From: Narcine bancroftii
Lineage: Eukaryota
NCBI RefSeq assembly: GCF_036971445.1
Contig: NC_091473.1
Coordinates: 191,642,001 to 191,706,000, forward strand
DNA: 64,000 nucleotides
Direction of reading: 5' to 3'
The notes below the pieces were generated by a model. The model was given only the letters and a program-made list of their open reading frames with translations. It did not search any database and had not been told where the DNA came from. This document shows positions 248 through 56,322 of this stretch, piece by piece; positions within the stretch are counted from its first letter, which is position 1, and every line of letters starts with the position of its first letter. The position numbers were made by a program, and so were the translations under genes.

Positions 248-282
248 CTTCCTCTGCTCGACTTATTCTCAACGTACTCCCG
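248..282 (-). CDS. Possible cytoplasmic exon 2 (REYVENKSSRG)
   Basis: Acceptor ttggcttcaatcag|CGG in phase 0. It either uses weak donor AG|gtcggc, splicing to acceptor gtcccctgcag| at position 9 and off the window edge, or reads through to TGA at 226-228. Confidence 0.35.
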
Positions 283-289
283 CTGATTG

Positions 290-575
290 AAGCCAATAGA
301 ACGGCCGCAGCAGCACAGAAGACAGGCCCTTCTAGTCAGTGCTGAACTATTTTTCGCATCCGCTCCCCTCCCCATCCATAGACCTCTCCATGTTTTCAAT
401 GCTGAAGTTGAGCCCGCATTCACTGGCTCAATTCGTTCTCTGCGTGAAGTTCCCCAAATGTACCCACCCCCCCTAAATATTTCCCCTTTCACCCTTAACC
501 TTGTCCTCTAGCCCAACCTCAGTGGGAAAAAAAGCCGACCTATATTTACTCATAGACCCATCATCGTTTTGTATA
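290..575 (-). mobile_element. CR1 LINE 3' fragment
   Basis: Similar to the CR1 3' ends at 12490-12800 and 1950-2290 (MKGEIFRG, VNAGS..ALK remnants). Confidence 0.6.
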
Positions 576-681
576 CATTAAACATGGATTTCATTTCATA
601 AATCCATGCTGACTTCATTTTATATCCGACCCCAAACACCTTATCCGCGAATAACATAACGGGTTCATTTATAGTGCTTAC

Positions 682-725
682 CTGAGCTGCCCTGTCATGG
701 CCCATATCCTTTTGACGACTGGCCC
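682..725 (-). CDS. Probable cytoplasmic exon 1 of the VJ-C1 receptor
   Basis: Acceptor ctcttatatctag|GG, strong donor CAG|gtaagc, 44 nt, phase 1 to 0, compatible with the TM exon. Encodes (G)ASRQKDMGHDRAAQ in non-repeat sequence. Confidence 0.6.
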
Positions 726-879
726 CTAGATATAAGAGCACGAATTGAAGACATTAGTTGGTCCTACCAATAATAATAATTAGTAGGTCATTAGATTCCC
801 AAAATCACCACTCACACATTATAGTAATGTTCCATGTCAATAGTTTCCAACAATTTTACTCTAACCGATGGTCTATTGG

Positions 880-1320
880 CTATACCTCATGAGGAGATTG
901 GGTCTGTCACCAAACGCATATTCCTCCAGGTGGGGAGCATTCTGAACGGTTGCATCACTGTCTGGTGCCAGTGCCCAGGGCAGGAAAAGACTACAAAGAG
1001 TTGAGAACCCAGCCAGCTCTATCACGGGCACCAGTCTTCGCTCCATCGAGGACACCTAAAAGAGGCGGTGTCTCAAGAAAGCAGCCTCTATCCTCAAGGA
1101 TCCCCCCCCCCACACCCCCGACACCACCCAGGCCCTCTTCACATCACCACCTTACACCCCGGTACCTTCTTTCAGGATTTCTGCGTTTTTACCCATCAGA
1201 TTTGTTAACCACAGACACCAGCTATTTTTTCTCCTTATTTTTTAAAACATGATTTAAACCTGTCTCAAATAACGAATTTCGTGACACATGTTCATGACAA
1301 TAAAATTTGATTCTGGTTTC
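880..1320 (+). mobile_element. Rex1/Babar-type LINE 3' fragment
   Basis: Degenerate copy of the family at 61685-62310 (ggagcattctgaacggttgcatcactgtctgg, CLKKAASILKDP remnant, catgacaataaa..ttctg tail). Confidence 0.6.
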
Positions 1321-1574
1321 TCAAATGCTTTCCCCAATGCCAATTAATCTCTAATTACTTTACACTTCAGCAGAAGCCACATTTCCACCTATACCCTTCA
1401 ATCCAAGATTGACCAGCAAGGGCTTTTCTCTATAGAGTGACGAAGAGTGAAGATTGCCTTAAAAGTGGTGCATAAGAAAGGCCTTGATAGGGTGGGCAGC
1501 CAGTATCTGTTCCCCCAGCGTGACAACAGCAAAGAGCCGGAAGAGATCTGTTTAGGTGAGTGCATGGACCTTTA

Positions 1575-2290
1575 GGGGAGATGTCAGACGACATAAACAG
1601 GATGCAGAGTTGGGCAGAAAAGTTGAAGATGGAGTTCACTCCGGATAAGTGTGAGGTGATACATTTTGGAAGGTCATACCAGAAGGCTGAGTGTGGAGGA
1701 ACAGAGGAACCCCACATCTCTCAAGGTGGCCACTCAGGTTGATCGGACAGTTAAGAAGGCCTATGGGACATTGGGCTTCATTAGTCAGGGGATTGAGTTC
1801 AAGAGTTGAGAGGTCATGTTGCAGCTCGGCAAATCTCTGGTGAGACCCCACTTGGAGTAATGCGTTCAGATTGGAAAATAACTCTTGTGAGGCAAGACTA
1901 TCAGAGCTGGGACTTTTTAGAGCATAGAAGGACGAGAGGAGGCTTAATAGAGGTCTATAAGATTCTGAGAGACATGGACAAGGTGGACAGCCAGCGTCTT
2001 TTTCCCAGAGCGGAATAGCAAACACCAGAGGACGTGTACAAAGTGAAGGGATGGAAGTTTAAGGGAGACATTGGGGTGTATTTTTTAAAACAGAGAGTTT
2101 GGGGGCCTGGAATGCATTGCCAGGGGTAGTGGTGGACGCTGGAACATTAGGGGCATTTCAGAGACTCTTGAGACAAGTGGATGAAAGAATATAGAGGGTT
2201 ACTAAGGGCCTAGCATTTTTTATAGTAGGAATATACAGATTGGTACGACATCGAGGTCTGAAGGGCCTGAACTGAGTTCTATCTATTTAG
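1575..2290 (+). mobile_element. CR1 LINE 3' fragment
   Basis: DINRMQSWAEKLKMEFTPDKCEVIHFGR and RGGLIEVYKILRDMDKVDSQRLFP. Confidence 0.85.
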
Positions 2291-2622
2291 GTGAGGAGAT
2301 GAGATGTCAGATGTTTTTTTCGAATACAGGCGCCGACGGTGGTGGTTATAGCTGATACAATAGGGGGCATTTAACAGTCTCTCGGAGGAGCACATGGATG
2401 CAAGAAAAATAGAGGGCTATGAGCATGGGGTTGGGAAGGGTTAGATTGTCGCGGACGAGGTCTACAAAGGTCGGGCCGAAAGGGCTGTAAATTTCCCCTG
2501 TCGTCGAACACGATCCGCAAAACTCCCATTTCGCCTCCTCGGGTGCAGTCGGTAGCCTGGAGAATGGGGCCTCGACAACGGCTCGCCGTTCATGCAAGAC
2601 GAAAGTGACCCTCCTGCCTCAC

Positions 2623-2712
2623 CTGTTCGGCAGCTCTTATGGACCAGGACAGCACTGAGGACGAGCAAGCAAGCGAGGATCCCCGAGGTGCATGCCACTG
2701 CAGGACACCAGT
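2623..2712 (-). CDS. Transmembrane exon of the VJ-C1 receptor
   Basis: Acceptor ttctatgtttctccag|AC, donor G|gtgagg, 90 nt, phase 1-1. Encodes DWCPAVACTSGILACLLVLSAVLVHKSCRT: hydrophobic span with no charged residue, then a basic stop-transfer segment. Confidence 0.82.
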
Positions 2713-2759
2713 CTGGAGAAACATAGAAATCCATGAGACCGTGAACTTGCTTCTGGGAT

Positions 2760-3200
2760 GCCTGTTTGACTGGTATTAAGAATAATTGACGAGGACGGGG
2801 ACTATTTCTAAACAGTCGAGTGCTGCAGGCCAGGAGTACATGGTTGGAGCACATACAACCCTGAGATTCCCTTTCCCGGGGGCGCGTTGGAATTACTATG
2901 AATTGGTAGCGCGTCAACCAACTGACCGCGCCCTACAGAGAACAAAAATCTATAAAGTGCAGAAACAAATGAGTCCCTGATTGAGTCTGTCCGACGGTGG
3001 AGGGGCAGCAGCTGGTCCCTGAACCTGGTGGGTGCGAGTCTTGGGGCACCGACACCTCTTTCCTGACGGCAGCAGTGAGAACAGAGCTGGGTGGATCCTT
3101 GCTCTCCGATGTTCTCGATGGTGGGGAGGGTTTTTCTGTTATTGTCCTGGGGTTTAGGCTCATGGAATATTGGTGCCCCCCCACCCACCCAATACCAGAC
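2760..3200 (-). mobile_element. Rex1/Babar-type LINE fragment
   Basis: LPTIENI...RFRDQLLP remnant matching the other copies. Confidence 0.5.
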
Positions 3201-3829
3201 CCGGTCAGAACGATACCATCCGTGGGAATGCGTTATCACAAAAGCATGGCAACGTTTTAACCGAACAAAGAACAGAAGCAACGTTTTCTGCTCGCCTGGC
3301 GGGTTCTTTTCAATGAACGTCTCAATCGGTTCCTTTCGTATCTTTTCTTCCTATCCCGGTTTCCCCCTCCCAATATCTGCTGGCGAGAGAAAGCTCAGAA
3401 CCCGAATGGCGCTTAAACATCACTGGGTCTAAATCCTGCAAACCTCCTTCCAACAGCGCATCTTTCCCAGCGGCCGATCGTTTGTCATTCTGCACCCCAC
3501 TCCCGCGATGACAGAAAGGTCTGCCCGGGGTTCCGTCGGGGCTCTCTCCAACCGGGATAGCATTGGCAGCGAAATCCCCAGATTCTGCTAGATCTCTCCC
3601 TATCTCTCCGCCTTCTTTCTTCCAGCTGTCCTCCGCCCCCCTTCTCTCTCCATTCACAGAGCCGCCACCCTCCCCCCGTTTTCTCGTACTCTCCCTCCCT
3701 TATCCACCTATATTTTGCGACCGTGCTCCTCCCCTCCCCGTCCCTCGCTCCCTCCCCACCAGCCTGTCTACATTTTGTTCACACCCTGATGAACGGCTCA
3801 AGCCCAAAACGTTGGTTTTGCATCGTTAC

Positions 3830-4712
3830 CTTTATAACCATATAACAATTTATAGCACGGAAACAGGCCATCTCGGCCCTTCAAGTCCGCGCGGATATAC
3901 GTGAAACTTCAACTAGTTCCACCTACCCACGCCCATGCCCATAACCCTCCAACCCCCTCACATCCATGCACTCATCCAACCTCCTCTTAAATGACAGAAT
4001 TGACCCTGCCCCAACCACTCATTCCACTCAGCCACCGCTCTCTGAGTGAAGAAGCTTCCTCTTATATTCCTCCTAAAGTTTTGCCCCCTAATCCTTAACT
4101 TATGACCCCTTTTTCCAATCTCCCGCACCCTCAGGGGAAAGAGCCTATTCACATCTACTCTATTTATTCCCTTCATAATTTTAAATACCTCTATCAAATC
4201 CCCCCTCAACCTTTTATGCTTCAACGAATAAAAACCCAGTCTACCTCTGTATTCAAGATACTGCAATCCAAGCAACATTTTAGTAAATCTTCTCTGCACC
4301 CTCTCCACCTTATTTATATCCTTCCTATAATTTGGGGACCAGAACTGCACACAATACTCCAAATTTGGCCTCACCAAAGCCTTAAACAGTCTCAACATCA
4401 CCTCCCAGCTCCTATATTCTATGCTATGATTTATTAAGGCCAGCATACCCAAAGCCTTCTTCACCACCCAATCTACATGGGAATCCACCTTCAAGGACCG
4501 CTGAACCGTTATTCCAAGATCCCTCTGTTCCTCAGCATTCGTCAACACCCTCCCCTTCACTGCATACGTCCTAATTTGGTTATTCTTCCCAAAATGAGGC
4601 ACCTCACACTTGTCTACATTAAACTCCATCTGCCACTTTTCCAAACAGTCCAAATCCTTCTGCAGTCCACGAAAACCCTCCTCACTATTCACAACTCCCC
4701 CTATTTTTGTAT
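3830..4712 (-). mobile_element. CR1 LINE, 5'-truncated, in the C1-TM intron
   Basis: ORF 3958-4692 (LQKDLDCLEKWQMEFNVDKCEV, LVRPNLEYCVQFWSP, RGDLIEVFKI) plus CR1 3' UTR and tail. Confidence 0.92.
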
Positions 4713-4865
4713 CGTCTCATATGAAGTGCCCGGTTTGACCTGCTGAGTTTCCACACACACACACTACATCGACCTAAAGAGGTTCAGTCACAATTTATTG
4801 AAGGGCGTTTTGGATCGGAGACATTTCGAACACAGCGGAAGCTTATCCTCAGCACAGCCCCTCAC

Positions 4866-5186
4866 CTTGGTGTGTCTCAGCGACGCGTCGAGTCACATTC
4901 TCGGATCGCTGCTTGCCGGAGCCTCCGAACTGGGCAATACATGTGCACACTCCGCCGTTCCTCCAGGTTTCCAGGGGCACCAGCACTTGGCTTCTAACGG
5001 TGTATTTCTCGTCCGAGTCCACCGTGCTGGAATCGCTCGGACCTTTGGTCATCTGCCCCGAGATGTTCCAGTAAATAACCATCTGGGTCGAGGTCAGGCC
5101 GCTGACCTGACACACCAAGGGAACAGACCCGTTCGTCTCAGACGGCGGGGCGAACACCAACAGGCTGGTCATGTTGGAAGAGCTGT
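4866..5186 (-). CDS. C1-set Ig constant domain exon
   Basis: Acceptor cttcttctgttcag|AC, donor G|gtgagg, 321 nt, phase 1-1. Motifs LLVFAPP, LVCQVSGL, VIYW, DEKYTVRSQVLVP, TWRNGGVCTC resemble Ig/TCR C1 domains. N-glycosylation sequons NMT, NGS, NIS, NVT. Confidence 0.92.
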
Positions 5187-5740
5187 CTGAACAGAAGAAG
5201 AGGAGGAGGCCATTCGCCCCGTCGGCTCATCCCCACCTCCCTGCCTTTTCCCCATATGTAAAAATCTAGATATGTTTTAAATATATTTACGGAGGTCGCC
5301 TTCATTGGGCAGTGACTTCCACATGTAAGGGGCGAGCTGATGACAATCAGCTGGTGACCCAACTCCCCGCGCCTGACAGCCACCCTCCCAGCTGACCCTG
5401 CCCCCCTCCCCGACCTGCGCAGGCCTACAGGGCGGGGATTCACTTCTGGATTCACCCCCTCCCCACCCTCTGGGAAAAGCAGTTCCTCCTCGAATTTGTC
5501 GAGGCTTTCGCGCGGTTGTGGGCGCAGCGCCCGCGGTTGGATCCCCATGTCCTGAGCGGGGAGGGGGGGGGGGTCCCGGTTTCTCCCATCCCCGATCAAA
5601 AGTGGTGATGTAGGTGAATCGGATGCAATTTGGGGAGAAAGGGTCTGTGGCCGTGCTGCATGTCTGAAAAAAGACCTATGTTGAGAGATAGGGACATCTT
5701 CACCGATTTGCGTATTATGCGACCGCTCGCCTTCTCTTAC

Positions 5741-6073
5741 CTCCAACCAAAAGCGTGGAGCCTTTCCCAAGCGCTGGACCGAATCCCAGTGCTTTGCAGA
5801 AGTAGGTACCCGAGTCCTCCGTCTGGGCGTCTCGGATTTCCAGAATCAACATGTGATCGCTGGAGCCTTTGGTGCAATTTATCCTCCAACCCGGCTGATG
5901 ACAGACCCCGGTCTCGATGGGAGCCAGGGCTTCGTTCACACGCTGTTTGAACCAGAGACCCGAGCTCGCTAATACCACGCGATCCTCTGAGATGCAGGTC
6001 AGTTTAACCGTCTGACCCACATCAGCGGTCACCACATCCAGACCGGCGGAACCAAACGGTGCGGGCACGGGAT
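5741..6073 (-). CDS. V-set Ig domain with J-like G strand encoded in one exon (germline-joined VJ)
   Basis: Acceptor tacttttcag|AT, donor G|gtaag, 333 nt, phase 1-1. Protein has GQTVKLTC, GLWFKQ, LEIRDAQTEDSGTYFC, then KALGFGPA and LGKGSTLLV (F/W-G-x-G-T-x-L-x-V type J motif). No intron or RSS between V and J. Confidence 0.93.
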
Positions 6074-6199
6074 CTGAAAAGTACATGGAAATTATTTATT
6101 TAGAGAGATCGCACGAACTGCGACTGACAGACGTGGCCTCTATTAAGAAATGGCCTCACCATTGTAGCTTGTACTCGTCTAAGATATCTGTAACCCCAC

Positions 6200-6640
6200 A
6201 CCCCGAGAAAGATCAGAATTACAACTTCTGGTCACGAAATTCGTCGTTCTGCGGCGGTATCGCCCTGCAAATATTGCTGTGAATTTATATTTCAAAACTA
6301 AATAAACAGGGCAAGAAAGTTGGAGAGAGTGTCTGGAGTTCATTGTCCGATGGCGGAGGGGTTGAAGCTGCCCTTGGGCCGCTGAGTGTTCCAGCAGTGC
6401 GAAGAGGGCATGGCCTGGGTGGTGGTGGTGGGTGGGTGGGGTGGGGGGCTCGGGAGTCCATGAGGGTCGAGGCTGCTTTCTTGAGACATCGCCCCTTGTA
6501 GATGTCCTAGAAGGAGTGAGGACTGGCCGAGTTCGCAAGTCTCTGTGGAATTTTCCGGGCCTGGGCATTGACACCCTCCACACCAGACACTGATGTAACC
6601 CAGTCAGAATGCTCCCTCCAGTAGAAATTTTCGAGAGTGT
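6200..6640 (-). mobile_element. Rex1/Babar-type LINE fragment in the leader-V intron
   Basis: HHPGHALFALL remnant, ggctgctttcttgagaca motif, atcagaatt tail. Confidence 0.6.
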
Positions 6641-6834
6641 CTTGTAGTCTTGTATCGACTTACGGGCGGGGCTGAGGGGGTCGTGTTGCGGCGAGGCAGG
6701 CGTTAATTATCCGTCCTTAAACGGGCTCTTTAAACGAAGGATTCTCCCCACATGCTGTTATGATCCTGTTGCCTCAGACGCACATCTCCAAAAAAATCTC
6801 AGGAGAAACCGGTAGATTTAGGATCAAAAGTAAC

Positions 6835-7020
6835 AGGAAAGTCTGCAGACTTGGAGAAAAAAAAACACGAGGCTGCAGAAACTCAGCAGGTCAAACAGTG
6901 TCCTTCATGTAGCAAAGATAAAGATACAGAACCAACGTTTCGGGCTTGAGCCCTTCGTCCTGAAACGTTGATAATGTACCTTTATATTTTCCGGATAAAA
7001 TTCACCTGCTGAGTTTCTCC
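6835..7020 (-). mobile_element. Penelope-like terminal repeat fragment
   Basis: aactcagcagg..aacgtttcgggcttgagcccttc..cctgaaacgttg..cctgctgagtttctcc; related pieces at 3600-3830, 50690-51240, 51440-51690, 55970-56230, 60780-60890. Confidence 0.55.
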
Positions 7021-7190
7021 CGCGCCCGGTTTTTTTTTCTAGATTATGAATGAGGTTTATTTAATTAACTGGTTATTATTTCTCCGTTTACATGGGGAGC
7101 TCAATCCGGACCACCCGTCTCGGCTCCTCGTTTGATCACCGAGCTTAAGCGCGATTATTTCGGATCTAAAAGTTCCCAAACCCGACTCAC

Positions 7191-7245
7191 CGCTCGCCCG
7201 GAGCATTTGGACAGTGAAGACGAGAGACAAAGCCGCGACCGACAT
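7191..7245 (-). CDS. Leader (signal peptide) exon of a non-rearranging VJ-C1 antigen-receptor-like gene
   Basis: ATG at 7245 gives hydrophobic MSVAALSLVFTVQMLRAS, then G|gtgagt consensus donor. 55 nt, phase 1, matching the V exon acceptor; Ig/TCR-style split leader. Confidence 0.85.
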
Positions 7246-7400
7246 CGAGGTCTCGGGTTCTCGGTCTCCGGCGGGAGGAGGGGGAGTGATCGGCCGAATT
7301 CAGCCCCGGCGGCGAGTCTCCGAGGCGGGGCCGCTGGAACCCACGCCTTTGTGCGGGTTACGACATATTCTCCACCCTCCCCAGGTGAGGATGTCAGGGA
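7246..7400 (-). promoter_or_regulatory. CpG-rich putative promoter of the VJ-C1 gene
   Basis: Immediately upstream of the leader ATG; dense CpG, GGCGGG boxes near 7270 and 7324, no TATA box seen. Confidence 0.45.
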
Positions 7401-18814: not shown

Positions 18815-21800
18815 AGAGGAGTCACGTGATGGAGTAGTGGCCGGACGGTGAACTCCAGGCCCCTCCAGAAAAGTCAGAAAAAACAAAGCAAAACACAAAG
18901 GCACAAAAATAAAAATCAAAGTAAAGTGAATATAAAGGTGGAAAGAAGATGGCGACGAAAAAAGAAAAGTCAAAACCAACGGTAAGAAGAGAGGAAGAGA
19001 AGACAACGGAAGATGAAGGAAAAGGCCTTACCTGTTCGAAGAGGCCCGCGGTGGAGAGAGAAACCCGCTCCCTCAGGTCGGTAGAAAGTGGACTACAAAA
19101 ATGGCTCGATGAGCCGAGTAAAAGTGCGCAACCGTGCATGCGTGAGGAGTCGCGCATGCGCGATGCGCATGAAATAAAACACACCGACGGGAGGGGTGAC
19201 CAGCTGGGGAGTCGATCTCCACAGCCGGCAATGACAGCTGCAGAACACCTGCAGCAAGAGGAGAACATAGAAGACAACGAAAACAAGAAAGAAGAGAAGA
19301 AAAGGGCAACAAAGAAACAACAGATGGCCAACCCAGAGGAAGAAGAAGAGGAAGAGTACAGTGAAATAGAAGAAGAAGGGAAAGGCAAGATAAAGGATAT
19401 ACTTTCTCTTATTAAAGAATACATGGAGTCATTTAAAGAATGGCAAGCGCAAGAATTTAATGATTTAAGAAGAAGAATAAACAATACAGAAGAGAAAATG
19501 AATAAAATAGATATGACCTTATCAGAAATGGGAAAAAGAATGGACAAGGTGCAAGAACGAGAAGCAGCAGTAGAAATGGAGGTAGAGGACTTAAAAAAGA
19601 AATTAGAGGAATCTAATAAAAAAGTTAAAGAGACACAAGAACTGTTAGCTCAGAAAATAGATATAATGGAAAATTATAACAGAAGAAATAACATAAAGAT
19701 AGTGGGCCTTAAGGAAGATGAAGAAGGCAAGAATATGAGAGAGTTTATAAAAGATTGGATCCCTAGGATCCTAGGATGTCCAGAACTACAGCAAGAAATG
19801 GAAATAGAAAGGGCACATAGAGCATTGGCCTTTAAACCACAATCACAACAAAAGCCAAGATCTGTTTTAGTAAAATTCCTAAGATATACTACAAGAGAAA
19901 AGGTAGTGGAGAAAACAATGGAAAAAGTAAGAGAGGACAATAAGCCACTGGAGTACAAAGGGCAAAAAATCTTCATTTATCCAGATATAAGTTTTGAACT
20001 CCTGAAGAAGAGAAAGGAGTTCAATACAGCAAAGGCGATTTTATGGAAGAAAGCGTATAAATTTGTACTAAAGCATCCAGCGGTATTGAAAATATTTATT
20101 CCAGGACAACAAAACAGACTATTCTCGGATCCAGAGAAAGCACGAAAATTTGCAGAACAATTACAAAATAGACTGATAATGAAGACGTGTAACGAGAGTA
20201 CAAAAGACTGCGAACTAAAAAGACATAAGTTTTGAACTCCTGAAGAAGAGGAAGGAGTTCAAAAAATCGAAAACGATCTTATGGGAAAAAAACTATTCTT
20301 GGATCCAGAGGAAGCAAGGAAATTTGCAGAACAACTACAAAACAAACAGAGAGATGAAGACATGTAATAAGAGTAAAAATGACCACGATTTATATGTATG
20401 TGGGTAAAGAGGTATATGTGTGTATATGTATAATCTGCATACATGAATGTATCCGTATTTAGAGGAAAATATAGATAGTATAGACAAGAATTAATAAGGG
20501 AAGGAAAAGGAATAGAGGGAATAAGGAGGGAATTAAAAGAGTGACCTTTGTCACATATGAAAAGTGAAATCTTTTCTGGGGGGAGGCTGGGTGGGGGGGT
20601 GTTACGGTCACTGCAAAATCAGCTGACACTTGCGAGCGAATTCGCAAATCCAAATGGAGAGGGGAGATGTGGTTGTCTGACAAGGGATAAAGGACAACTC
20701 AGAAGGGGAAGGGGGGATTGGGGCTAAAGAAGTCTTAAATAGGAGAATAAGGAAAATGTTTGATGTTTTAGGAATGTTGTCTTATAAAGGATTCAAAACA
20801 AGAAAACAGAAATGGATAAGAAGGAAAGGTAATGATGGAGAAACGGAAAGGGAAGATAAACAAGGTATAAAATGGCTACGTTGAACTATATGACTTTAAA
20901 TATTAATGGAATACATAACCAAATTAAAAGGAAGAAACTGCTAAATTTACTGAAAAAAGAAAAAATTGATATAGCATTTGTGCAAGAAACACATTTAACT
21001 GAATTGGAGCATAAGAAATTAAAGAGAGATTGGGTAGGACATGTAACAGCAGCATCGTGTAATTCAAAAGCAAGAGGAGTAGCTATATTAATTAGTAAAA
21101 ATGTGCCATTTAAAATAGAAGAGGAAATAATAGATCCAGCAGGGAGATATGTAATGATAAAATGTCAGATATATTCGGAGTTTTGGAATCTACTCAATGT
21201 ATATTCACCTAACGAAGAAGATCAAAAGTTTATGCAAGATATCTTTTTGAAGGTAGCAGATACGCAAGGGAACATATTAATAGGAGGGGATTTCAACCTG
21301 AATTTGGATTCAAATATGGACAAAACTGGGAAAAAAATTAACAGAAAGAACAAAGTAACCAAATTTATAATTAAATCGATGGAAGAAATGCAACTTTTGG
21401 ATATATGGAGGAAACAACACGCAAAGGAAAAGGAATATTCATATTACTCGGCTAGACATAAAACATACTCAAGAATAGACCTATTTTTGTTATCAGCTCG
21501 TATGCAAGATAGAGTAAAAAAAACAGAATATAAAGCTAGAATACTATCGGACCATTCACCCTTAATATTGACAGTAAAGTTAGAGGACATCCCTCCAAGA
21601 ATGTATAGATGGAGATTAAACCCCATGTTACTTAAAAGGCAGGATTTTAGAGAATTCATTGAAAGACAAATTAAAATGTATTTTGAAATAAATACGGAAT
21701 CAGTGAAAGATAAGTTTATACTATGGGATGCAATGAAAGCATTCATTAGAGGGCAAATAATAAGTTATGTAACCAAGATGAAGAAGGACTATAATCAGGA

Positions 21801-24800
21801 AACAGAGCAGTTGGAAAAGGAAATAGTAAATATAGAAAAAGAATTAGTAATGAAGGAAGATACAACTAAAAGAAGAGAATTGGCGGATAAAAAAATAAAA
21901 TATGGAACACTACAAACATATAAGGTGGAGAAGACCATAATGAAGACAAAACAGAAATATTATGAACTAGGAGAAAAAACGCACAAAATCCTAGCATGGC
22001 AGCTTAAGACAGAACAAGCTAAGAAAATGGTATTGGCATCAAGGAAAAAAGACAAACAAATTACATATAATCCAAAAGAAATTAAGGAAAACTTTAGAGA
22101 ATTCTATGAACAATTATACCGAACTGAAAACGAAGGGAAAGAAGGGAAAATAGATGAATTTCTAACTAAAATTGAACTACCAAAACTACAAATAGAGGAA
22201 CAAAATAAATTAACAGAGCCATTTGGAATAGTAGAAATACAAGGGATAATAAAAAAATTAACAAATAATAAGACACCAGGAGAGGATGGATTCCCAATAG
22301 AATTCTATAAAACATTTAAAGACTTATTAATTCCGCCCCTCCTGGAAGTAATCAACCAGATTGATAAAACGCAAAGCTTACCAGATTCATGTAAAACAGC
22401 AATAATTACAGTAATACTAAAGCAAGGGAAAGATCCACTCACACCAGCGTCATATAGACCAATATCTTTACTTAACACAGATTATAAGATAATAGCTAAA
22501 TTATTAGCAAACAGATTAGCAGAGTATGTACCGAAAATGGTAAATCTAGACCAAACTGGATTTATCAAAAAAAGACGCACAACAGACAATATTTGTAAAT
22601 TTATTAACTTAATTCATACAGTAGAAGGGAATAAAGCACCAACAGTAGCAGTTGCTTTAGACGCAGAGAAGGTCTTTGACAGAGTAGAATGGAATTATTT
22701 GTTCAAAGTATTGCAAAAATTTAGTTTACCGGAGAAGTATATTAATTGGATTAAAGCATTATATAAGGGACCATTAGCGAAAGTGACAGTAATGTATCAA
22801 AGCAATTTAACTTAAGCAGGTCAACACGACAGGGATGCCCACTATCACCTTTATTGTTTGCGTTAGCTATAGAACCACTAGCAGAATTGATAAGAACAGA
22901 AAATAATATAAAAGGGATAAAAATAAAAGACAAGGAATATAAAATCAGTTTATTTGCGGATGATGTTATAGTATACTTAACAGAACCAGAACTATCAATA
23001 AAAGAATTATATAAGGAATTGAAGGAATATGGAGAAGTGTCGGGTTACAAGATCAATGTAAATAAAAGTGAAGCAATGCCTATGAATGATGCGGATTTCT
23101 CAAAATTTAAGAAAGAATCACATTTAGATGGCAAATGCAAGCAATAAGATATCTAGGTGTACCAATAAACAAAAATCTCGGCCAACTATATAAACTCAAT
23201 TATTATCCACTAATGAAAAAATTACGGGATGATTTAGAGCATTGGAAAGATTTACCATTAACACAAATAGGAAGGATAAACTGTATTAAAATGAACATTT
23301 TTCCAAGGATATTATACCTATTTCAGGCATTGCCAATACAACTGACAGAGAAATTCTTCAAGGAGTTAAAGAAAATAATAATGAAATTTTTATGGAAAGG
23401 GGGGAAACCGAGGATAGCACTAGATAAATTAACAGAATGGTATAAACAAGGAGGCTTACAACTGCCAAACTTTAAAAATTATTATACAACCGCACAATTA
23501 AGATACCTATCAGATTTTTATCAAACAAGGGAAAAGCCAGATTGCACTAGATTAGAATTAGATAAAATAGGGGAAAAGACACCTGAACACATATTATATA
23601 AATGGGATGAAAAATTGGTACAACATAGAAGTTCTCCAGTATTACATCATCTCCTCAATATTTGGAAGAAGATTCATGTAGATGAAATAAAACAAATTAT
23701 CAATTACCAAAACGAATATTAACGCAAAACAAGTTACTCCCTTTTACAATAGATAACCTTTCCTTTAGAGAATGGGAGAAAAAAGGGATTTAAAGAATAG
23801 AAAATTGTTTTTCAGGAAATAGATTATTATCCTTTGAACAAATGAAAGATAAATACAATATAACTCAAGATACAGCACTGGCATATTACCAATTGAGATC
23901 CTACTTGAAGGATAAATTAGGAAGCAGTTTGAGTTTGCCAGAGGGAAGTAACTTTGAATATGTGATTACAGATACAATGATAATCAAAAGATTTATAACA
24001 AATATGTATATTAAACTGCAAGAAAAGGAGAATGAGGAAACAAATGGTAAAACTAAACAAAAATGGGAACAGGATTTAAATATAAAGATAAAAAAGGAAA
24101 CATGGGAGAAGTTATGCTCTGGAACGATGAGAAATACAATAAATACGAGGTTACGTATGATACAATATAACTGGATACACAGGCTATACATTACACCTCA
24201 AAAGTTAAATAAATGGGACCCAACAGTATCTGATAGATGTTTTTGATGTAAAAAGAAATGGGAACAACAATTCATGCAATCTGGACATGTGAAAAAGTAG
24301 AAAAATTTTGGGAAGATCTCAATCAGATATTAAATAAAATAACAGAAAACAATATACCAAAGAATCCAGAGATCTTTCTCCTAAGTAACATAAAAAACAA
24401 AGAATTTGGAATTGATTTGGAGGATGCACAAAAAAGATTTGTTAAGATAGCTCTAGCCGTAGCAAAAAAATGTATTATGTCAACCTGGAAATTAGAAGAT
24501 AACTTGAGAATACAACAATGGTATATAGAAATGAATAAATATATTCCATTAGAAAAAATAACATATAGTTTAAGAAATAATATTGAAATATTCGAACAAA
24601 TATGGGAGCCTTATATTAAACACAATAGCGAAAACCTACTGGGGACAATCACTACCTAAGTTAAAGGAAGGAAAAGGAAATGAAAAGAATGGACTCAGTG
24701 GAATTTCTGGTGTATTTTTATTGAATGACAACATTGTCTGACTGGTTTAATGTATCCTAGATTTTATACCTTAAATGGACGGGAGGGGGGTGGTGGGGTG

Positions 24801-32436: not shown

Positions 32437-35400
32437 GGGAGTCACGTGATGGAGTAGTGGCCGGACAGTGAACTCCAGCCCTCTCCAGAAAAGTCGGAAA
32501 AAACAAAGGAAAACACAAAGGCACAGAAATAAAAATTAAAGAAAAGTGAGTATAAAGGTGGAAAGAAGATGGCGACGAAAAAAGAAAAATCGAAATCAAC
32601 GGTAAGAAGAGAGGAAGAGAAGACAACGGAAGAAGAAGGAGAAGGCCTTACCTGTTCGAAGAGGCCCGCGGTGGAGAGAGAAACCCGCTCCCTCAGGTCG
32701 GTAGAAAGTGGACTACAAAAATAGCTCGCTGAGCCAAGTAAAAGTGCGCAACCGCGCATGAAAAAAAACACACCGACGGGAGGGGTGACCAGCTGGGGAG
32801 TCGATCTCCACAGCCGGCAATGACAGCTGCAGAACACCTGCAGCAAGAGGAGAACACAGAAGACAACGAAAACAAGAAAGAAGAGAAGAAAAGGGCAACA
32901 AAGAAACAACAGATGGCCAACCCAGAGGAAGAAGAAGAAGAAGAGGAAGAGTACAGTGAAATAGAAGAAGAAGGGAAAGGCAAGGTAAAGGATATACTTT
33001 CTCTTATTAAAGAATACATGGAGTCATTTAAAGAATGGCAAGTGCAGGAATTTAATGATTTAAGAAGAAGAATAAACAATACAGAAGAGAAAATGAATAA
33101 AATAGATATGACCTTATCAGAAATGGGAAAGAAAATGGACAACATGGAAGAGCGGGAAGCAGCAGTAGAAATGGAGGTAGAGGACTTAAAAAAGAAATTA
33201 GAGGAATCTAATAAAAAAGTTATAGAGACACAAGAACTGTTAGCTCAGAAAATAGATATAATGGAAAATTATAACAGAAGAAATCACATAAAGATAGTGG
33301 GCCTTAAAGAAGATGAAGAAGGCAAGAATATGAGAGAGTTTATAAAAGATTGGATCCCCAGGATCCTAGGATGTCCAGAACTACAGCAAGAAATGGAAAT
33401 AGAAAGGGCACATAGAGCATTGGCCTTTAAACCACAACCACAACAAAAACCAAGATCTATTTTAGTAAAATTCCTAAGATATACTACAAGAGAAAAGGTA
33501 CTAGAGAAGACAATGGAAAAAGTAAGAGAGGGCAACAAGCCACTGGAGTACAAAGGGCAAAAAATCTTCATTTATCCAGATATAAGTTTTGAACTCCTGA
33601 AGAAGAGAAAGGAGTTCAATACAGCAAAGGCGATTTTATGGAAGAAAGGGTATAAATTTATACTAAAGCATCCAGTGGTATTGAAAATATTTATTCCAGG
33701 ACAACAAAACAGACTATTCTCGGATCCAGAGGAAGCACGAAAATTTGCAGAACAATTACAAAATAGACTGAGGGATGAAGACGTGTAATGAGAGTACAAA
33801 AGACTGAGAACTAAAAAGACACATAAGCTTTGAACTCCTGAAGAAGAGAAAGGAGTTCAATACATCGAAAACGATCTTATGGGGAAAAAAAAACTATTCT
33901 CGGATCCAGAGGAAGTAAGGAAATTAGCAGAACAACTACAAAACAAGCAGAGAGATGAAGACATGTAATAAGAGTAAAAATGACCATGATTTATATGTAT
34001 GTGGGTAAAGAGGTATATGTGTGTATATGTATAATGTGCATACATGAATGTATCCGTATTTAGAGGAAAATATAGATAGTATAGACAAGAATTAATAAGG
34101 GAAGGAAATGGAATTGAGGGAATAAGGAGGGAACTAAAAGAGTGACCTTTGTTACATATGAAAAGTGAAATCTTTCCTGGGGGGGGGCTGGGTGGGGAGG
34201 AGTTGCGGTCACTGCAAAATCAGCTGACGCTTGCGAGTGAATTCGCAAATCCAAATGGAGAGGGGAGATGTGGTTGTCCGACAAGGGATAAAGGACAACT
34301 CAGGAGGGAAAGGGGAGATTGAGGCTAAAGAAGTTTTAAATAGGAGAATAAGGAAAATGTTTGATGTTTTAGGAATGTTGTCTTATAAAGGGTTTAAAAC
34401 AAGAAAACAGAAATGGATAAGGAGGAAAGGTAATGATAGAGAAACGGAAAGGGAAGATAAACAAAGTATAAAATGGCTACGTTGAACTATATGACTTTAA
34501 ATATTAATGGAATACATAACCAAATTAAAAGGAAGAAACTGCTAAATTTACTGAAAAAAGAAAAAATTGATATAGCATTTGTGCAAAAAACACACTTAAC
34601 TGAATTTGAGCACAAGAAATTAAAGAGAGATTGGGTAGGACACGTAACAGCAGCATCGTATAATTCAAAAGCAAGAGGAGTAGCTATATTAATTAGTAAA
34701 AATGTGCCATTTAAAATAGAAGAGGAAATAATAGATCCAGCAGGGAGATATGTAATGATAAAATGTCAGATATATTCGGAGTTTTGGAATTTACTCAATG
34801 TATATTCACCTAACGAAGAAGATCAAAAGTTTATGCAAGATATCTTTTTGAAGGTAGCAGATACGCAAGGGAACATATTAATAGGAGGGGATTTCAACCT
34901 GAATTTGGATTCAAATATGGATAAAACTGGGAAAAAAATTAACAGAAAGAACAAAGTAATCAAATTTATAATTAAATCAATGGAAGAAATGCAACTTTTG
35001 GATATATGGAGGAAACAACACCCAAAAGAAAAGGAATATTCATATTACTCGGCTAGACATAAAACATACTCAAGAATAGACCTATTTTTGTTATCAGCTA
35101 GTATGCAAGATAGAGTAAGAAAAACAGAATATAAAGCTAGAATATTATCGTACCATTCACCCTTGATATTGACAATAGAGTTAGAGGACATCCCTCCAAG
35201 AATGTATAGATGGAGATTAAACCCCATGTTACTTAAAAGGCAGGATTTTAGAGAATTTATTGAAAAACAAATAAAAATGTATTTTGAAATAAATACGGAA
35301 TCAGTGGAAGATAAGTTTATACTATGGGATGCAATGAAAGCGTTCATTAGAGGGCAAATAATAAGTTATGTAACCAAGATGAAGAAGGACTATAATCAGG

Positions 35401-38400
35401 AAACAGAGCAGTTGGAAAGGGAAATAGTAAATATAGAAAAAGAATTTGCAATGAAGGAAGATACAACTAAAAGAAGAGAATTGGCGGATAAAAAAAATAA
35501 AATATGAAATACTACAAACATATAAGGTGGAGAAGAATATAATGAAGACAAAACAGAAATATTATGAACTAGGTGAAAAAACGCACAAAATCCTTGCATG
35601 GCAGCTTAAGACAGAACAAGCTAAGAAAATGGTATTGGCATCAAGGAAAAAAGACAAACAAATTACATATAATCCAAAAGAAATTAAGGAAAACTTTAGA
35701 GAATTCTATGAACAATTATACCGAACTGAAAACAAAGGGAAAGAAGGGAAAATAGATGAATTTCTGACTAAAATTGAACTACCAAAATTACAAATAGAGG
35801 AACAAAATAAATTAACAGAGTCAGTTGGAATAATAGAAATACAAGAGATAATAAAAAAATTACCAAATAATAAGACACCAGGAGAGGATGGATTCCCAAT
35901 AGAATTCTACAAAACATTTAAAGACTTATTAATTCCACCCCTCCTGGAAGTAATCAACCAGATTGATGAAACACAAAGCTTACCAGATTCATGTAAAACA
36001 GCAATAATTACAGTAATACTAAAGCAAGGGAAAGATCCACTCTCACCAGCGTCATATAGACCAATATCTTTACTTAACACAGATTATAAGATAATAGCTA
36101 AACTATTAGCAAACAGATTAGCAGAGCATGTACCGAAAATGGTAAATTTAGACCAAACTGGATTTATCAAAAAAAGACGCACAACAGACAATATTTGTAA
36201 ATTTATTAACTTAATTCATGCAGTAGAAGGAAATAAAGCACATACAGTAGCAGTTGCTTTAGATGCAGAGAAGGCCTTTGACAGAGTAGAATGGAATTAT
36301 TTGTTCAAAGTATTGCAAAAATTCAGTTTACCAGAGAAGTATATTAATTGGATTAAAGCATTATATAAGGGACCGTTAGCGAAAGTGACAGTAAATGGAC
36401 ATATATCAAAGCAATTTAACTTAAGCAGGTCAACACGGCAGGGATGCCCACTATCACCTTTATTGTTTGCGTTAGCTATAGAACCACTAGCAGAATTGAT
36501 AAGAATAGATAATAATATAAAAGGAATAAAAATAAAAGACAAGGAATATAAAATCAGTTTATTTGCGGATGATGTTATTGTGTACTTAACAGAACGAGAA
36601 CAATCAATAAAAGAATTATATAAGAAATTGAAGGAATATGGAGAAGTGTCGGGTTACAAGATTAACGTAAATAAAAGTGAAGCAATGCCTATGAATAATA
36701 CGGATTTCTCAAAATTTAAGAAGGAATCACCATTTAGATGGCAAATGCAAGCAAGAAGATACCTAGGTGTACAAATAAACAAAAATCTCGGCCAACTATA
36801 TAAACTCAATTATTATCCACTAATGAAAAAAATTACAAGACGATTTAGAGCATTGGAAAGATTTACCACTAACACTAATAGGAAGGATAAACTGAATTAA
36901 AATGAACATTTTTCCAAGGATATTATACTTATTTCAGGCATTGCCAATACAACTGGCAGAGAAATTCTTCAAGGAGTTAAAGAAAATAGTAAGGAAATTT
37001 TTATGGAAAGGGGGGAAACCGAGGATAGCACTAGATAAATTAACAGAATGGTATAAACAAGGAGGCTTACAACTGCCAAACTTTAAAAATTATTATAGAG
37101 CCGCACAATTAAGATACCTATCAGATTTTTATCAAACAAGGGGAAAGCCAGATTGGACTAGATTAGAATTAGATAAAATAGGGGAAAAGACGCCTGAACA
37201 CATATTATATAAATGGGATGAAAAATTGGTACAACATAGAAGTTCTCCAGTATTACATCATCTCCTCAATATTTGGAAGAAGATTCATGTAGAAAGAAAT
37301 AAAACAAATTATCAATTACCAAAACGAATATTGACGCAAAACAAGTTACTCCCTTTTACAATAGATAACCTTTCCTTTAGAGAATGGGAAAAAAAAGGGA
37401 TTAAAAGAATAGAAAATTGTTTTTCAGGAAATAGATTATTATCCTTTGAACAAATGAAAGATAAGTACAATATAACTCAAGATACAGCGCTGGCATATTA
37501 CCAATTGAGATCCTACTTGAAGGATAAATTAGGAAGCAGTTTGAGTTTGCCAGAGGCAAGTAACCTTGAACATGTGATTACAGATAGAATGATAATCAAA
37601 AGATTTATAACAAATATGTATATTAAACTGCAAGAAAAGGAGAATGAGGAAACAAATGGTAAAACTAAACAAAAATGGGAACAAGATTTAAATATAAAGA
37701 TAAAAAAGGAAACATGGGAGAAGTTATGTTCTGGAACGATGAGAAATACAATAAATACGAGGTTATGTATGATACAATATAACTGGATACACAGGCTATA
37801 CATTACACCTCAAAAGTTAAATAAATGGGACCCAACAGTATCTGATAGATGTTTTCGATGTAAAAAAGAAATGGGAACAACAATTCATGCAATCTGGACA
37901 TGTGAGAAAGTAAAAAAATTTTGGGAAGATCTAAATCAGATATTAAACAAAATAACAGAAAACAATATACCAAAGAATCCAGAGATCTTCCTCCTAAGTA
38001 ACATAAGAAACAAAGAATTTGAAATTGATTCGGAGGATGCACAAAAAAGATTTGTTAAGATAGCTCTAGCCGTAGCAAAAAAATGTATTATGTCAACCTG
38101 GAAATTAGAAGATAATTTGAAAATACAACAATGGTACATAGAAATGAATAAATGTATTCCATTAGAAAAAATAACATATAGTTTAAGAAATAATATTGAA
38201 ATATTCGAACAAATATGGGAGCCTTACATTAAATACAATAGCGAAAACCTACCGGGGACAATCATTACCTAAGTTGATGGAAGGAGAAGGAAATGAAAAG
38301 AATGGACTCAGTAGAATTTCTGGTGTATTTTTGTTGAGTGACAACATTGTCTGACTGGTTTAATGTATCCTAGATTGTATACCTTAAATGGATGGGAGGG

Positions 38401-41500: not shown

Positions 41501-42852
41501 GTCCTTCTTCATCTTGGTTACATAACTTATTATTTGCCCTCTGATGAACGCTTTCATTGCATCCCATAGTATAAACTTATCTTTCACTGATTCCGTATTT
41601 ATTTCAAAATACATTTTAATTTGTCTTTCAATGAATTCTCTAAAATCCTGCCTTTTGAGTAACATGGAGTTTAATCTCCATCTATACATTCTTGGAGGGA
41701 TGTGTTCTAACTTGATTGTCAATATTAAGGGTGAATGGTCCGATAATATTCTAGCTTTATATTCTGTTTTTCTTACCCTATCTTGCATATGAGCTGATAA
41801 CAAAAATAGGTCTATCTATGAGTATGTTTTATGTCTAGCTGAGTAATATGAATATTCCTTTTCATTTGGGTGTTGTTTCCTCCATATATCCAAAAGTTGC
41901 ATTTCTTCCATCGATTTAATTATAAATTTGGTTACTTTGTTCTTTCTGTTAATTTTTTTCCCAGTTTTGTCCATATTTAAATCCAAATTCAGGTTGAAAT
42001 CCCCTCCTATTAATATGTTCCCTTGCGTATCTGCTATCTTCAAAAAAATATCTTGCATAAACTTTTGATCTTCTTCGTTAGGTGAATATACATTGAGTAG
42101 ATTCCAAAACTCCGAATATATCTGACATTTTATCATTACATATCTCCCTGCTGGATCTATTATTTCCTCTTCTATTTTAATTGGCACATTTTTACTAATT
42201 AATATAGCTATTCCTCTTGCATTTGAATTATACGACGCTGCTGTTACATGTCCTACCCAATCTCTCTTTAATTTCTTGTGCTCCAATTCAGTTAAATGTG
42301 TTTCTTGCACAAATGCTATATCAATTTTTAATTTTTTCAGTAAATTTAGCAGTTTCTTCCTTTTAATTTGGTTATGTATTCCATTAATATTTAAAGTCAT
42401 ATAGTTCAGCGTAGCCATTTTATACTTTGTTTATCTTCCCTTTCCGTTTCTCCATCATTACCTTTCCTTCTTATCCATTTCTGCTTTCTTGTTTTGAACA
42501 CTTTATAAGACAACATTTCTAAAACATCAAACATTTTCCTTATTCTCCTATTTAAAACTTCTTTAACCCCATTCTCCCCTCCCCCTCCTGAGTTGCCCTT
42601 TATCCCTTGTGGGGCAACCACATCTCCCCTCTCCATTTGGATTTGCGAATTCACTCGCAAATGTCAGCTGATTTTGCAGTGACCGTAACTCCTCCCCACC
42701 CAGCCCCCCCAGAAAAGATTTCAATTTTCGTATGTAACAAAGGTCACTCTTTTAAATCCCTCCTTATTCCCTCAATTCCATTTCCCTCCCTTATTAATTC
42801 TTGTCTATACTCTATATATTTTCCTCTAAATACGGATACATTCATGTATGCA

Positions 42853-56289: not shown

Positions 56290-56322
<33 letters not shown>

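What the first reader, a model, noticed from the sequence alone, without database searches (positions are those of the whole stretch)
248..7245. Non-rearranging VJ-C1-TM antigen-receptor-like gene
Seen: exons join in frame with canonical splice sites into leader, V with built-in J strand (YFC-KALGFGPA-LGKGSTLLV), C1, TM and cytoplasmic tail. There are no RSS and no separate J or D segments. Established: V(J)+C1 is the architecture of Ig and TCR chains. Non-rearranging versions (PRARP/VJ-C1 genes of bony vertebrates, shark UrIg-type genes) are discussed as relics of the pre-RAG receptor. Inference: this is an intact membrane-bound member of that class. It is not an Ig light chain (it has a TM) and not a TCR (no charged TM residue, multi-exon tail). 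Automated annotation would probably mislabel it Ig- or TCR-like.
Basis: partly seen in the sequence, partly recalled or inferred. Interest (0 to 1): 0.92.

Follow-up and report, generated by a model that had tools for sequence, protein, structure and literature searches.

The report
Non-rearranging V-C1 inhibitory receptor gene
This is a real, transcribed electric-ray gene for a membrane receptor shaped like one antigen-receptor chain (V with built-in J, one C1 domain) but with an inhibitory tail. It belongs to an old family found from chimaeras to reptiles that databases hold only under misleading antibody-like names.

Summary
Spliced RNA contigs from four runs of one study join leader, V(J), C1 and TM exons at exactly the predicted bases. 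No RSS-like site exists in the window.

The database protein for this gene is XP_069792500.1 of Narcine bancroftii, 301 aa, auto-named "Ig heavy chain Mem5-like". Its last coding exon carries an ITIM (SIYTSL).

The gene belongs to a vertically inherited family found in a chimaera, sharks, skates, rays, frogs, turtles and lizards. Shared features:
- an extra Cys pair in the V domain;
- a J-like strand running into GDS(S/Y)T;
- WNISG in a true C1-set domain;
- a membrane-proximal Cys and an uncharged TM;
- a C-terminal YxxL/ITIM.

It is not UrIg or UrIg2, and not a germline-joined Ig or TCR chain. It most likely matches the published PRARP family. I could not test that, because the paper and its sequences are not held.

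I read it as a dimeric inhibitory immunoreceptor; its ligand is unknown. The scan has already found this family on other DNA of this genome.

The parts
7191..7335 (-). 5' UTR (at least 90 nt; the RNA contig begins at 7335) and leader exon. ATG at 7245. The exon ends at 7191 in phase 1 before GTGAGT.
   Evidence: (record 1, X1: 7191-7335)
5741..6073 (-). V-set exon with the J-like G strand built in (YFC-KALGFGPA-LGKGSTLLVG). It has an extra Cys pair in the C'-D region. Transcript SNPs at 5970 and 5782 change L53F in the CDR1-like loop and F116S in the CDR3-like loop.
4866..5186 (-). C1-set constant-domain exon (LVCQVSG...VIYWNISGQ...CTCIAQF).
   Evidence: Z 13.8, rmsd 1.9 A over 96 residues to an IgG CH2 domain; IgNAR C1 13.5; TCR C 12.5
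2623..2712 (-). Stalk with membrane-proximal Cys (D-W-C239), an uncharged transmembrane helix and the first cytoplasmic residues (HKSCRT).
   Evidence: helix 240-266
682..725 (-). Cytoplasmic exon (G)ASRQKDMGHDRAAQ, phase 1 to 0. The next and last coding exon (SDAPSIYTSLHFAGSSSLPA, the ITIM) lies before the window start.

Best explanation
The locus is an intact, expressed, non-rearranging gene of Narcine bancroftii. It encodes a 301-aa type I membrane protein: signal peptide, V domain whose G strand (J) is in the same exon, one C1-set domain, a short stalk with a cysteine, an uncharged TM helix, and a short multi-exon tail ending in an ITIM (S-I-Y-T-S-L).

It belongs to a conserved gnathostome family of V(J)-C1-ITIM receptors. 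The family occurs in a chimaera, sharks, skates, rays, anurans, turtles and lizards, and has expanded to several copies in stingrays and mantas.

Proposed mechanism (inferred):
- The CDR-like loops of the germline-fixed V domain bind a ligand that is still unknown.
- The stalk cysteine and the C1 domain make a disulfide-linked dimer, either a homodimer or a pair with the product of the convergent neighbour gene.
- Ligand engagement leads to phosphorylation of the ITIM tyrosine and recruitment of SHP-type phosphatases, which dampens the cell's activation.

Shown here: gene structure, splicing, domain types, family and motif conservation. Inferred: dimerisation, inhibitory signalling, ligand binding through the CDR-like loops.

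The family is most probably the one published as PRARP (Fu et al. 2019, J Immunol 202:1992). I estimate about 0.6 for that identification.
For: - Exons and splice sites.
- Spliced contigs in four runs at exactly those junctions.
- Pfam V-set and C1-set.
- AlphaFold2 model: pLDDT 83-93 for most of the ectodomain, with dips to 69 near residues 71-80 and 61 in the stalk; TM helix at 240-266.
- The C domain matches Ig, IgNAR, TCR and MHC C1 domains at Z 11-13.8. The two-domain model matches whole TCR chains over 190-195 residues at Z 12.0-12.2.
- The family profile aligns collinearly with a teleost TCR-beta chain from leader through C (hhalign prob 98.4, E 1e-14).
- The database protein P0001 = XP_069792500.1 matches the exons at 100%.
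- Family members come from 25 or more species.
- The family tree follows the species tree: batoids 95*, tetrapods 100*, frogs 97*.
- Conserved motifs and the C-terminal tyrosine motif in rays, frogs, the turtle and one lizard.
- Among ray paralogues the CDR3-like loop is the most variable stretch: 1.39 bits, against 0.43-0.49 for FR2, FR3, the G strand and C1, and 0.76 for FR1.
- The two transcript SNPs both change residues in the CDR1- and CDR3-like loops.
- No RSS-like site.
Against: - The ITIM exon is outside the window. I know it only from NCBI's model; I did not see it in reads (the contigs run on about 500 nt past the TM exon, which fits).
- The tissues and cells that express the gene are unknown. 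The runs are coded, come from one study, and are held as contigs only.
- Sharks have P at position Y-2 (GPLYASL), which is not a textbook ITIM.
- There is no experimental or predicted support for a dimer.
- PRARP identity rests on my memory of an abstract. That abstract, as I recall it, calls the second domain C2, not C1.
- The first G of the FGXG J motif is not conserved in the family.
Confidence: 0.78

Rival explanations
1. It belongs to a conserved V(J)-C1-ITIM family that is distinct from PRARP and has never been described. PRARP would then be another non-rearranging VJ family.
For: No sequence in any search carries the name PRARP. No bird or teleost member was found. Pfam calls the second domain C1-set in frogs and turtles too, whereas I recall PRARP being described as V-C2. 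Full-text searches found no paper describing such a family in cartilaginous fish.
Against: The recalled PRARP features match one for one: single-exon VJ, one C domain in non-avian species, TM, ITIM, a linked gene pair, disulfide-linked dimers, presence in amphibians and reptiles. The homologue searches are limited by shared words and by length. Bird PRARPs (V only, as I recall) and teleost ones could easily be missed.
Confidence: 0.25
2. It is a shortened offshoot of the SIRP family (V-C1-C1 receptors with ITIMs), not a lineage of its own.
For: It shares the logic of a V domain with a J-like strand, a C1-set domain and an ITIM. Atlas neighbours include 'Signal-regulatory protein beta-1-like' (TM 0.57/0.60) and SHPS-1 (feature score 0.96). 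A shark 'SIRP beta-2-like' protein is among the weak V hits. An earlier scan report called a paralogue SIRP-like.
Against: Family-specific motifs (the Cys pair, GDSST, WNISG, the stalk Cys, a single terminal ITIM) are kept from the chimaera to reptiles. There is no second C1 domain. No SIRP appears in the top 50 of the structure search, and none appears above E 1e-4 in the V search.
Confidence: 0.1
3. It is a germline-joined member of a rearranging family (IgL or TCR) that acquired a TM exon.
For: Sharks and rays have germline-joined Ig genes. Automatic names are Ig-like. Profile hits to Fab and TCR chains are strong.
Against: Of the ten non-family V hits whose names I looked up (E 3e-16 to 7e-4), none is an Ig or TCR V except one lizard lambda-like cluster. 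Orthologues with the same TM and ITIM exist in tetrapods, and the tree follows the species tree. There are no RSS relics and no V or J segments in 64 kb.
Confidence: 0.03
4. It is a B7/butyrophilin-type ligand (V-C-TM) rather than a receptor.
For: The exon plan V-C-TM with a multi-exon tail is the same. Bovine butyrophilin matches at Z 11.7. A butyrophilin cluster is among the Atlas neighbours.
Against: It has a J-like G strand and WYKQ-type FR2. Its C domain scores higher with Ig, TCR and MHC C1 domains. It has an ITIM tail, no B30.2 domain and a stalk cysteine.
Confidence: 0.03

Closest known systems
[quoted passage not shown] 2019, J Immunol 202:1992). The paper is not held; details are from memory.
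   Same: Non-rearranging single-exon VJ domain, one further Ig domain in non-avian species, TM, cytoplasmic ITIM, a closely linked gene pair, disulfide-linked homo- or heterodimers, presence in amphibians and reptiles.
   Different: As I recall, it was not reported from cartilaginous fish. I recall the second domain being called C2; here it is C1-set by Pfam and by fold. Sequence identity with the published genes was not tested.
UrIg and UrIg2 of elasmobranchs (PMC12227049; structure 9dmx)
   Same: Non-rearranging VJ exon with a separate leader exon, followed by C1-type domains. The UrIg2 chain matches the C1 exon here at E 4.1e-10.
   Different: UrIg has three C1 domains, is secreted only, and is made in liver. 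UrIg2 has 9-11 C domains. Neither is described with an ITIM. Both are reported from elasmobranchs only, whereas this family has one C1 domain, an ITIM and tetrapod members.
TCR chains
   Same: Leader, V(J), one C1 domain, a connecting peptide with an interchain-type Cys, then TM, all collinear (hhalign E 1e-14). The two-domain model superposes on TCR chains over 190-195 residues.
   Different: No RSS and no separate J or D segments. No charged TM residue for CD3 assembly. An ITIM of its own. The V domain is not close to TCR V in sequence searches.
SIRP-alpha (SHPS-1) family
   Same: A V domain with a J-like strand, C1-set domain(s) and ITIM signalling.
   Different: SIRPs have two C1 domains, a long tail with several tyrosine motifs and no conserved stalk cysteine. 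No specific sequence grouping was seen.
Teleost NITRs (novel immune-type receptors)
   Same: A germline V domain with a J-like motif and an ITIM. Catfish NITRs are among the nearest non-family V hits. The tail motif Y-A-A-L-H-F resembles Y-A-S-L-E-F and Y-T-S-L-H-F here.
   Different: The second NITR domain is a V/I-type domain with its own J-like motif, not C1. NITRs are known from bony fish only.

Membership tests
PRARP (Fu et al. 2019) | V and J encoded in one germline exon, no rearrangement | tested here: met
   One exon, 6073-5741, spliced directly to C1 in RNA contigs. No RSS-like site.
PRARP (Fu et al. 2019) | V plus one C-type domain in non-avian species (I recall it as 'V-C2') | tested here: inconclusive
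   There is one C domain, but it is C1-set by Pfam and by fold. The 'C2' label is from memory and may only be a naming difference.
PRARP (Fu et al. 2019) | TM and a cytoplasmic ITIM | tested here: met
   P0001 ends ...SIYTSLHFAGSSSLPA. The motif is conserved in the family. The ITIM exon lies outside the window.
PRARP (Fu et al. 2019) | Closely linked pair of paralogous genes | not testable with these tools
PRARP (Fu et al. 2019) | Sequence orthology to the published PRARP-A/B | not testable with these tools
   The paper and its sequences are not held. No hit carries the name.
UrIg / UrIg2 | VJ followed by three (UrIg) or nine or more (UrIg2) C1 domains | tested here: not met
   There is a single C1 exon between V and TM, shown by RNA contigs. 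Definition from PMC12227049.
UrIg / UrIg2 | Secreted only (UrIg); restricted to elasmobranchs | tested here: not met
   The TM helix is spliced in. The family is present in frogs and reptiles.
Rearranging Ig/TCR chains | RSS-flanked V, separate J (and D) segments, junctional diversity | tested here: not met
   No RSS-like site. The contigs of four runs are identical across the junction apart from two SNPs. Contigs cannot exclude rare variants.
Rearranging Ig/TCR chains | Charged TM residues for CD3 or CD79 assembly | tested here: not met
   The TM is AVACTSGILACLLVLSAVLV, with no charged residue.
SIRP family | V-C1-C1 ectodomain | tested here: not met
   There is only one C1 domain.
NITR | A V domain followed by a V/I-type second domain | tested here: not met
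   The second domain is C1-set. hhalign to a catfish NITR covers only the V domain plus about 30 residues.

The most novel reading that the evidence does not exclude
This two-domain VJ-C1 membrane receptor family could be the surviving form of the two-domain VJ-C1 gene that PMC12227049 (Fig. 2 legend) postulates as the first stage of the antigen-receptor lineage. It is kept from chimaeras to reptiles. Together with its convergent neighbour it would form a TCR-like disulfide-linked heterodimer. That would give a living model of the pre-RAG receptor, with an inhibitory rather than activating output.
Probability: 0.1. Interest if true: 0.85.

Novelty: new member of a known kind. Interest (0 to 1): 0.5.

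Why it matters
Genes with an unsplit VJ exon next to a C1 domain are the main material for asking which gene the RAG transposon invaded.

This locus shows such a gene in a ray: the simplest V(J)-C1-TM layout, transcribed, with an ITIM. It also shows that the family goes back to the common ancestor of cartilaginous and bony vertebrates. The UrIg literature treats non-rearranging antigen-receptor-like genes as kept in elasmobranchs only.

If the family is PRARP, its range now reaches chimaeras, sharks and rays, and its second domain is a true C1 domain. That strengthens the antigen-receptor link.

On the practical side, dozens of RefSeq entries named 'Ig kappa/lambda/alpha/gamma/Mem5-like' are neither Ig chains nor Ig fragments.

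Tried and rejected
- Homodimer prediction of residues 19-241: no verdict, score 0.04. This is not evidence either way.
- The PRARP and UrIg J Immunol papers are not held. Searches for PRARP wording and for XMIV gave nothing usable.
- A possible last exon at 282-226 (REYVENK...*), which I read by eye, is rejected. The database protein uses another exon that is not in the window.
Only a family tree rooted on one TCR-beta chain was made.
- PDB sequence searches are swamped by antibodies, so the ranks of SIRP and UrIg2 against the family profile could not be read.
The full-length protein I used is the database's own record, P0001.
- P0102 turned out to be an engineered human antibody construct. 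It had already gone into the local HMM scan of all fetched proteins. After I recognised it I set it aside, and it is not in the tree or in any later search.
Full report
**Observation**

- Leader, 7245-7191.
- V, 6073-5741.
- C1, 5186-4866.
- Stalk and TM, 2712-2623.
- A 44-nt cytoplasmic exon, 725-682.

All are phase 1 until the last, which ends in phase 0. Every acceptor ends in AG after a pyrimidine tract, and every donor is GTGAG or GTAAG. Pfam scores the V exon as V-set (8.3e-8, 32.8 bits, cut-off 26). It scores the next exon as C1-set (7.4e-7, 29.9 bits, cut-off 21).

A scan for heptamer-spacer-nonamer signals found none in the whole 64-kb window. tblastn with each exon found no further V, J or C copies in the window.

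**Transcription**

One run search found four runs of one 2024 study that hold about half of the sampled words of 4866-6073, which is roughly the exonic share.

When the runs were laid on 1401-7400, each had one long contig with pieces at 5741-6073 and 4866-5186. Where the contigs reach further, they also have pieces at 7191-7335 and 2622-2712. The pieces carry 0-2 mismatches and abut in the contig (records 1, 11, 18, 19).

The leader-V, V(J)-C1 and C1-TM junctions are therefore real. The runs must be RNA, although their library type is not on record. The longest contig starts at 7335 and runs about 500 nt past the TM exon.

The only differences in the V exon are two SNPs seen in some runs:
- 5970, which changes L53F in the CDR1-like loop;
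- 5782, which changes F116S in the CDR3-like loop.

There is no junctional heterogeneity. Contigs cannot exclude rare variants.

**Identity**

A search of 1.84 billion representative proteins with the V exon returned a 301-aa protein that is 100% identical. It is XP_069792500.1 of Narcine bancroftii, named 'Ig heavy chain Mem5-like'.

It matches the window exons exactly. Its last 20 residues, SDAPSIYTSLHFAGSSSLPA, have no match in the window.

**Family**

Full-length and profile searches, with name look-ups, gave relatives in these groups:
- rays: Mobula (two species), Hypanus, Hemitrygon;
- skates: Amblyraja, Rhinoraja;
- sharks: Heterodontus, Scyliorhinus (two species), Mustelus, Stegostoma, Chiloscyllium, Hemiscyllium, Carcharodon, Cetorhinus;
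- a chimaera: Callorhinchus;
- many anurans;
- a turtle: Pelodiscus, two genes on one scaffold;
- lizards: Sceloporus, Podarcis.

All are 'uncharacterized' or carry mutually inconsistent Ig kappa, lambda, alpha, gamma or Mem5-like names.

Features shared in the alignments:
- the canonical Cys-Trp-Cys core;
- an extra Cys pair between C' and D;
- DSG-x-YYC;
- a J-like strand [FL]-x-[KN]-G-x-T-L-[LI]-V-G running into D-S-[SY]-T;
- a C domain with (V/A)C...W-N-I-S-G...C-x-[CV];
- a Cys just outside an uncharged TM;
- a tyrosine motif about 10 residues from the C terminus. It reads I-[LIV]-Y-A-S-L-[ED]-F in rays, P-[LT]-Y-A-S-L in sharks, I-x-Y-[AST]-x-L in frogs, and I-V-Y-A-H-L in the turtle.

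A maximum-likelihood tree of the V-C region follows the species tree. The chimaera branches at the base, at an unresolved fork. Tetrapods are supported at 100*, frogs at 97* and batoids at 95*. Expansions are lineage-specific, and the Narcine gene sits inside the batoid clade. This is vertical descent from the gnathostome ancestor.

**What the domains are like**

The AlphaFold2 model built on the family alignment is confident over most of the ectodomain, with block pLDDT of 83-93. It dips to 69 around residues 71-80 and to 61 in the stalk. It shows a TM helix at 240-266.

In a search of 48,161 representative chains, the C domain matches these:
- an IgG CH2 domain, Z 13.8, rmsd 1.9 A over 96 residues;
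- an IgG4 CH3 domain, 13.7;
- IgM C2, 13.5;
- IgNAR C1, 13.5;
- TCR C, 12.5;
- MHC class II membrane-proximal domains, about 12.

The two-domain model superposes best on whole TCR chains: 190-195 residues, rmsd 5.2-5.3 A, Z 11.7-12.2.

The family profile aligns collinearly with a teleost TCR-beta chain from leader to C (hhalign prob 98.4, E 1e-14). With a catfish NITR it aligns over the V domain only (E 1.5e-10).

In the PDB sequence search the C1 exon hits UrIg2 (9dmx) at E 4.1e-10 in one stretch. That is on a par with Ig constant domains.

Outside the family, the V exon's hits are long multi-Ig proteins. Those I looked up that align through the G strand are catfish NITRs, shark SIRP-like, IgSF3-like and pIgR-like proteins, and one lizard lambda-like cluster, with E-values from 3e-16 to 7e-4. 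This does not fit a germline-joined IgL or TCR gene.

**Mechanism**

Three points are shown here: the gene is non-rearranging, membrane-bound and ITIM-tailed.

The rest is inferred.
- Ligand binding by the CDR-like loops. Among ray paralogues the CDR3-like loop is the most variable stretch (1.39 bits). FR2, FR3, the G strand and C1 show 0.43-0.49, and FR1 shows 0.76. The CDR1-like loop is next among ectodomain segments at 0.99. The two Narcine SNPs both change residues in these loops.
- Covalent dimerisation through the conserved stalk Cys and the C1 domain. The partner may be another copy, or the product of the convergent neighbour gene that other scan notes report just before the window (unchecked).
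- Inhibition through SHP phosphatases bound to the phosphorylated ITIM.

A homodimer prediction gave no verdict and counts for nothing.

**Comparison with known families**

UrIg and UrIg2 share the unsplit VJ and the C1-type domains. UrIg has three C domains and is secreted. UrIg2 has 9-11 C domains. Both are said to be retained in elasmobranchs only (PMC12227049). Membership is not met.

The same paper postulates a two-domain VJ-C1 ancestor, and this family has that layout.

PRARP (Fu et al. 2019) is cited in PMC10751288 as an MHC-linked VJ gene. As I recall its abstract, it has every feature seen here: single-exon VJ, one C domain except in birds, ITIM, a gene pair, disulfide-linked dimers, and presence in bony fish, amphibians, reptiles and birds. 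It is the likeliest name for the tetrapod members found here.

The paper and its sequences are not held, so membership is untested. The recalled 'C2' label conflicts with the C1-set result.

SIRPs and NITRs work in a similar way, but their domain make-up differs.

**Rest of the window**

From 7.3 to 64 kb I found only repeats:
- LINE-like elements with endonuclease and reverse-transcriptase domains at about 18.9-24.7 kb and 32.8-38.3 kb on the plus strand;
- a reverse-transcriptase fragment at about 39.6-40.5 kb on the minus strand, with further unscanned ORFs up to 42.4 kb;
- a 4.4-kb array of a 24-bp unit at 56301-60693.

**Verdict**

The gene is real and the reading is essentially right. 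It is a new, unnamed member of a kind that has probably already been published. It extends that kind to cartilaginous fish.

The scan has already reported paralogues of this family on other DNA of this genome.

Noticed in passing
window 5970 and 5782: The only differences between the transcript contigs of the four runs and the genome in the V exon are two nonsynonymous SNPs. They change L53F in the CDR1-like loop and F116S in the CDR3-like loop. This may be allelic polymorphism at the presumed binding site.
   Followed up: partly
window 6074-6310: The contig of run X4 continues 237 nt from the V exon into the leader intron. This may be an unspliced or alternative 5' end.
   Followed up: no
window 18949-24659 (+), 32820-38272 (+), 39611-42418 (-): AT-rich LINE-like retrotransposon copies. 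Endonuclease and reverse-transcriptase domains occur on the two plus-strand copies. On the minus strand only a reverse-transcriptase fragment at 39614-40516 was scanned. They fill much of the region upstream of the gene.
   Followed up: partly
window 56301-60693: A satellite array of about 177 copies of a 24-bp purine-rich unit (AGAGAGAGAGAGTGGAAAGGAGAG), 85% matches. It accounts for the extreme GC and AT skew there and for a spurious 1544-aa ORF on the other strand.
   Followed up: partly
window 3800-4700 and 1600-2200 (introns): Very high summed contig depth with 90-95% identity, so the introns hold dispersed repeats. The 244-aa ORF at 3958-4692 has no Pfam match.
   Followed up: partly
P0134 (Xenopus tropicalis), P0153 (Sceloporus undulatus): Some tetrapod gene models carry two tandem V-C units before one TM and ITIM (V-C-V-C-TM). 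This is either a real duplication of the ectodomain or two fused neighbouring genes.
   Followed up: no
P0088, P0067 (catfish NITRs) versus the family tails: The NITR tail motif (N-Y-A-A-L-H-F) resembles this family's Y-A-S-L-E-F and Y-T-S-L-H-F. This may point to a shared cytoplasmic exon ancestry between NITRs and this family.
   Followed up: no
P0057, P0106, P0134, P0140, P0141 (Xenopus): The Xenopus members sit on records of 120.1, 135.4 and 147.2 Mb. From memory these are the sizes of chromosome 8L (X. laevis) and chromosome 8 (X. tropicalis), the MHC chromosome. This fits the remark in PMC10751288 that PRARP is MHC-linked. I did not verify it.
   Followed up: no
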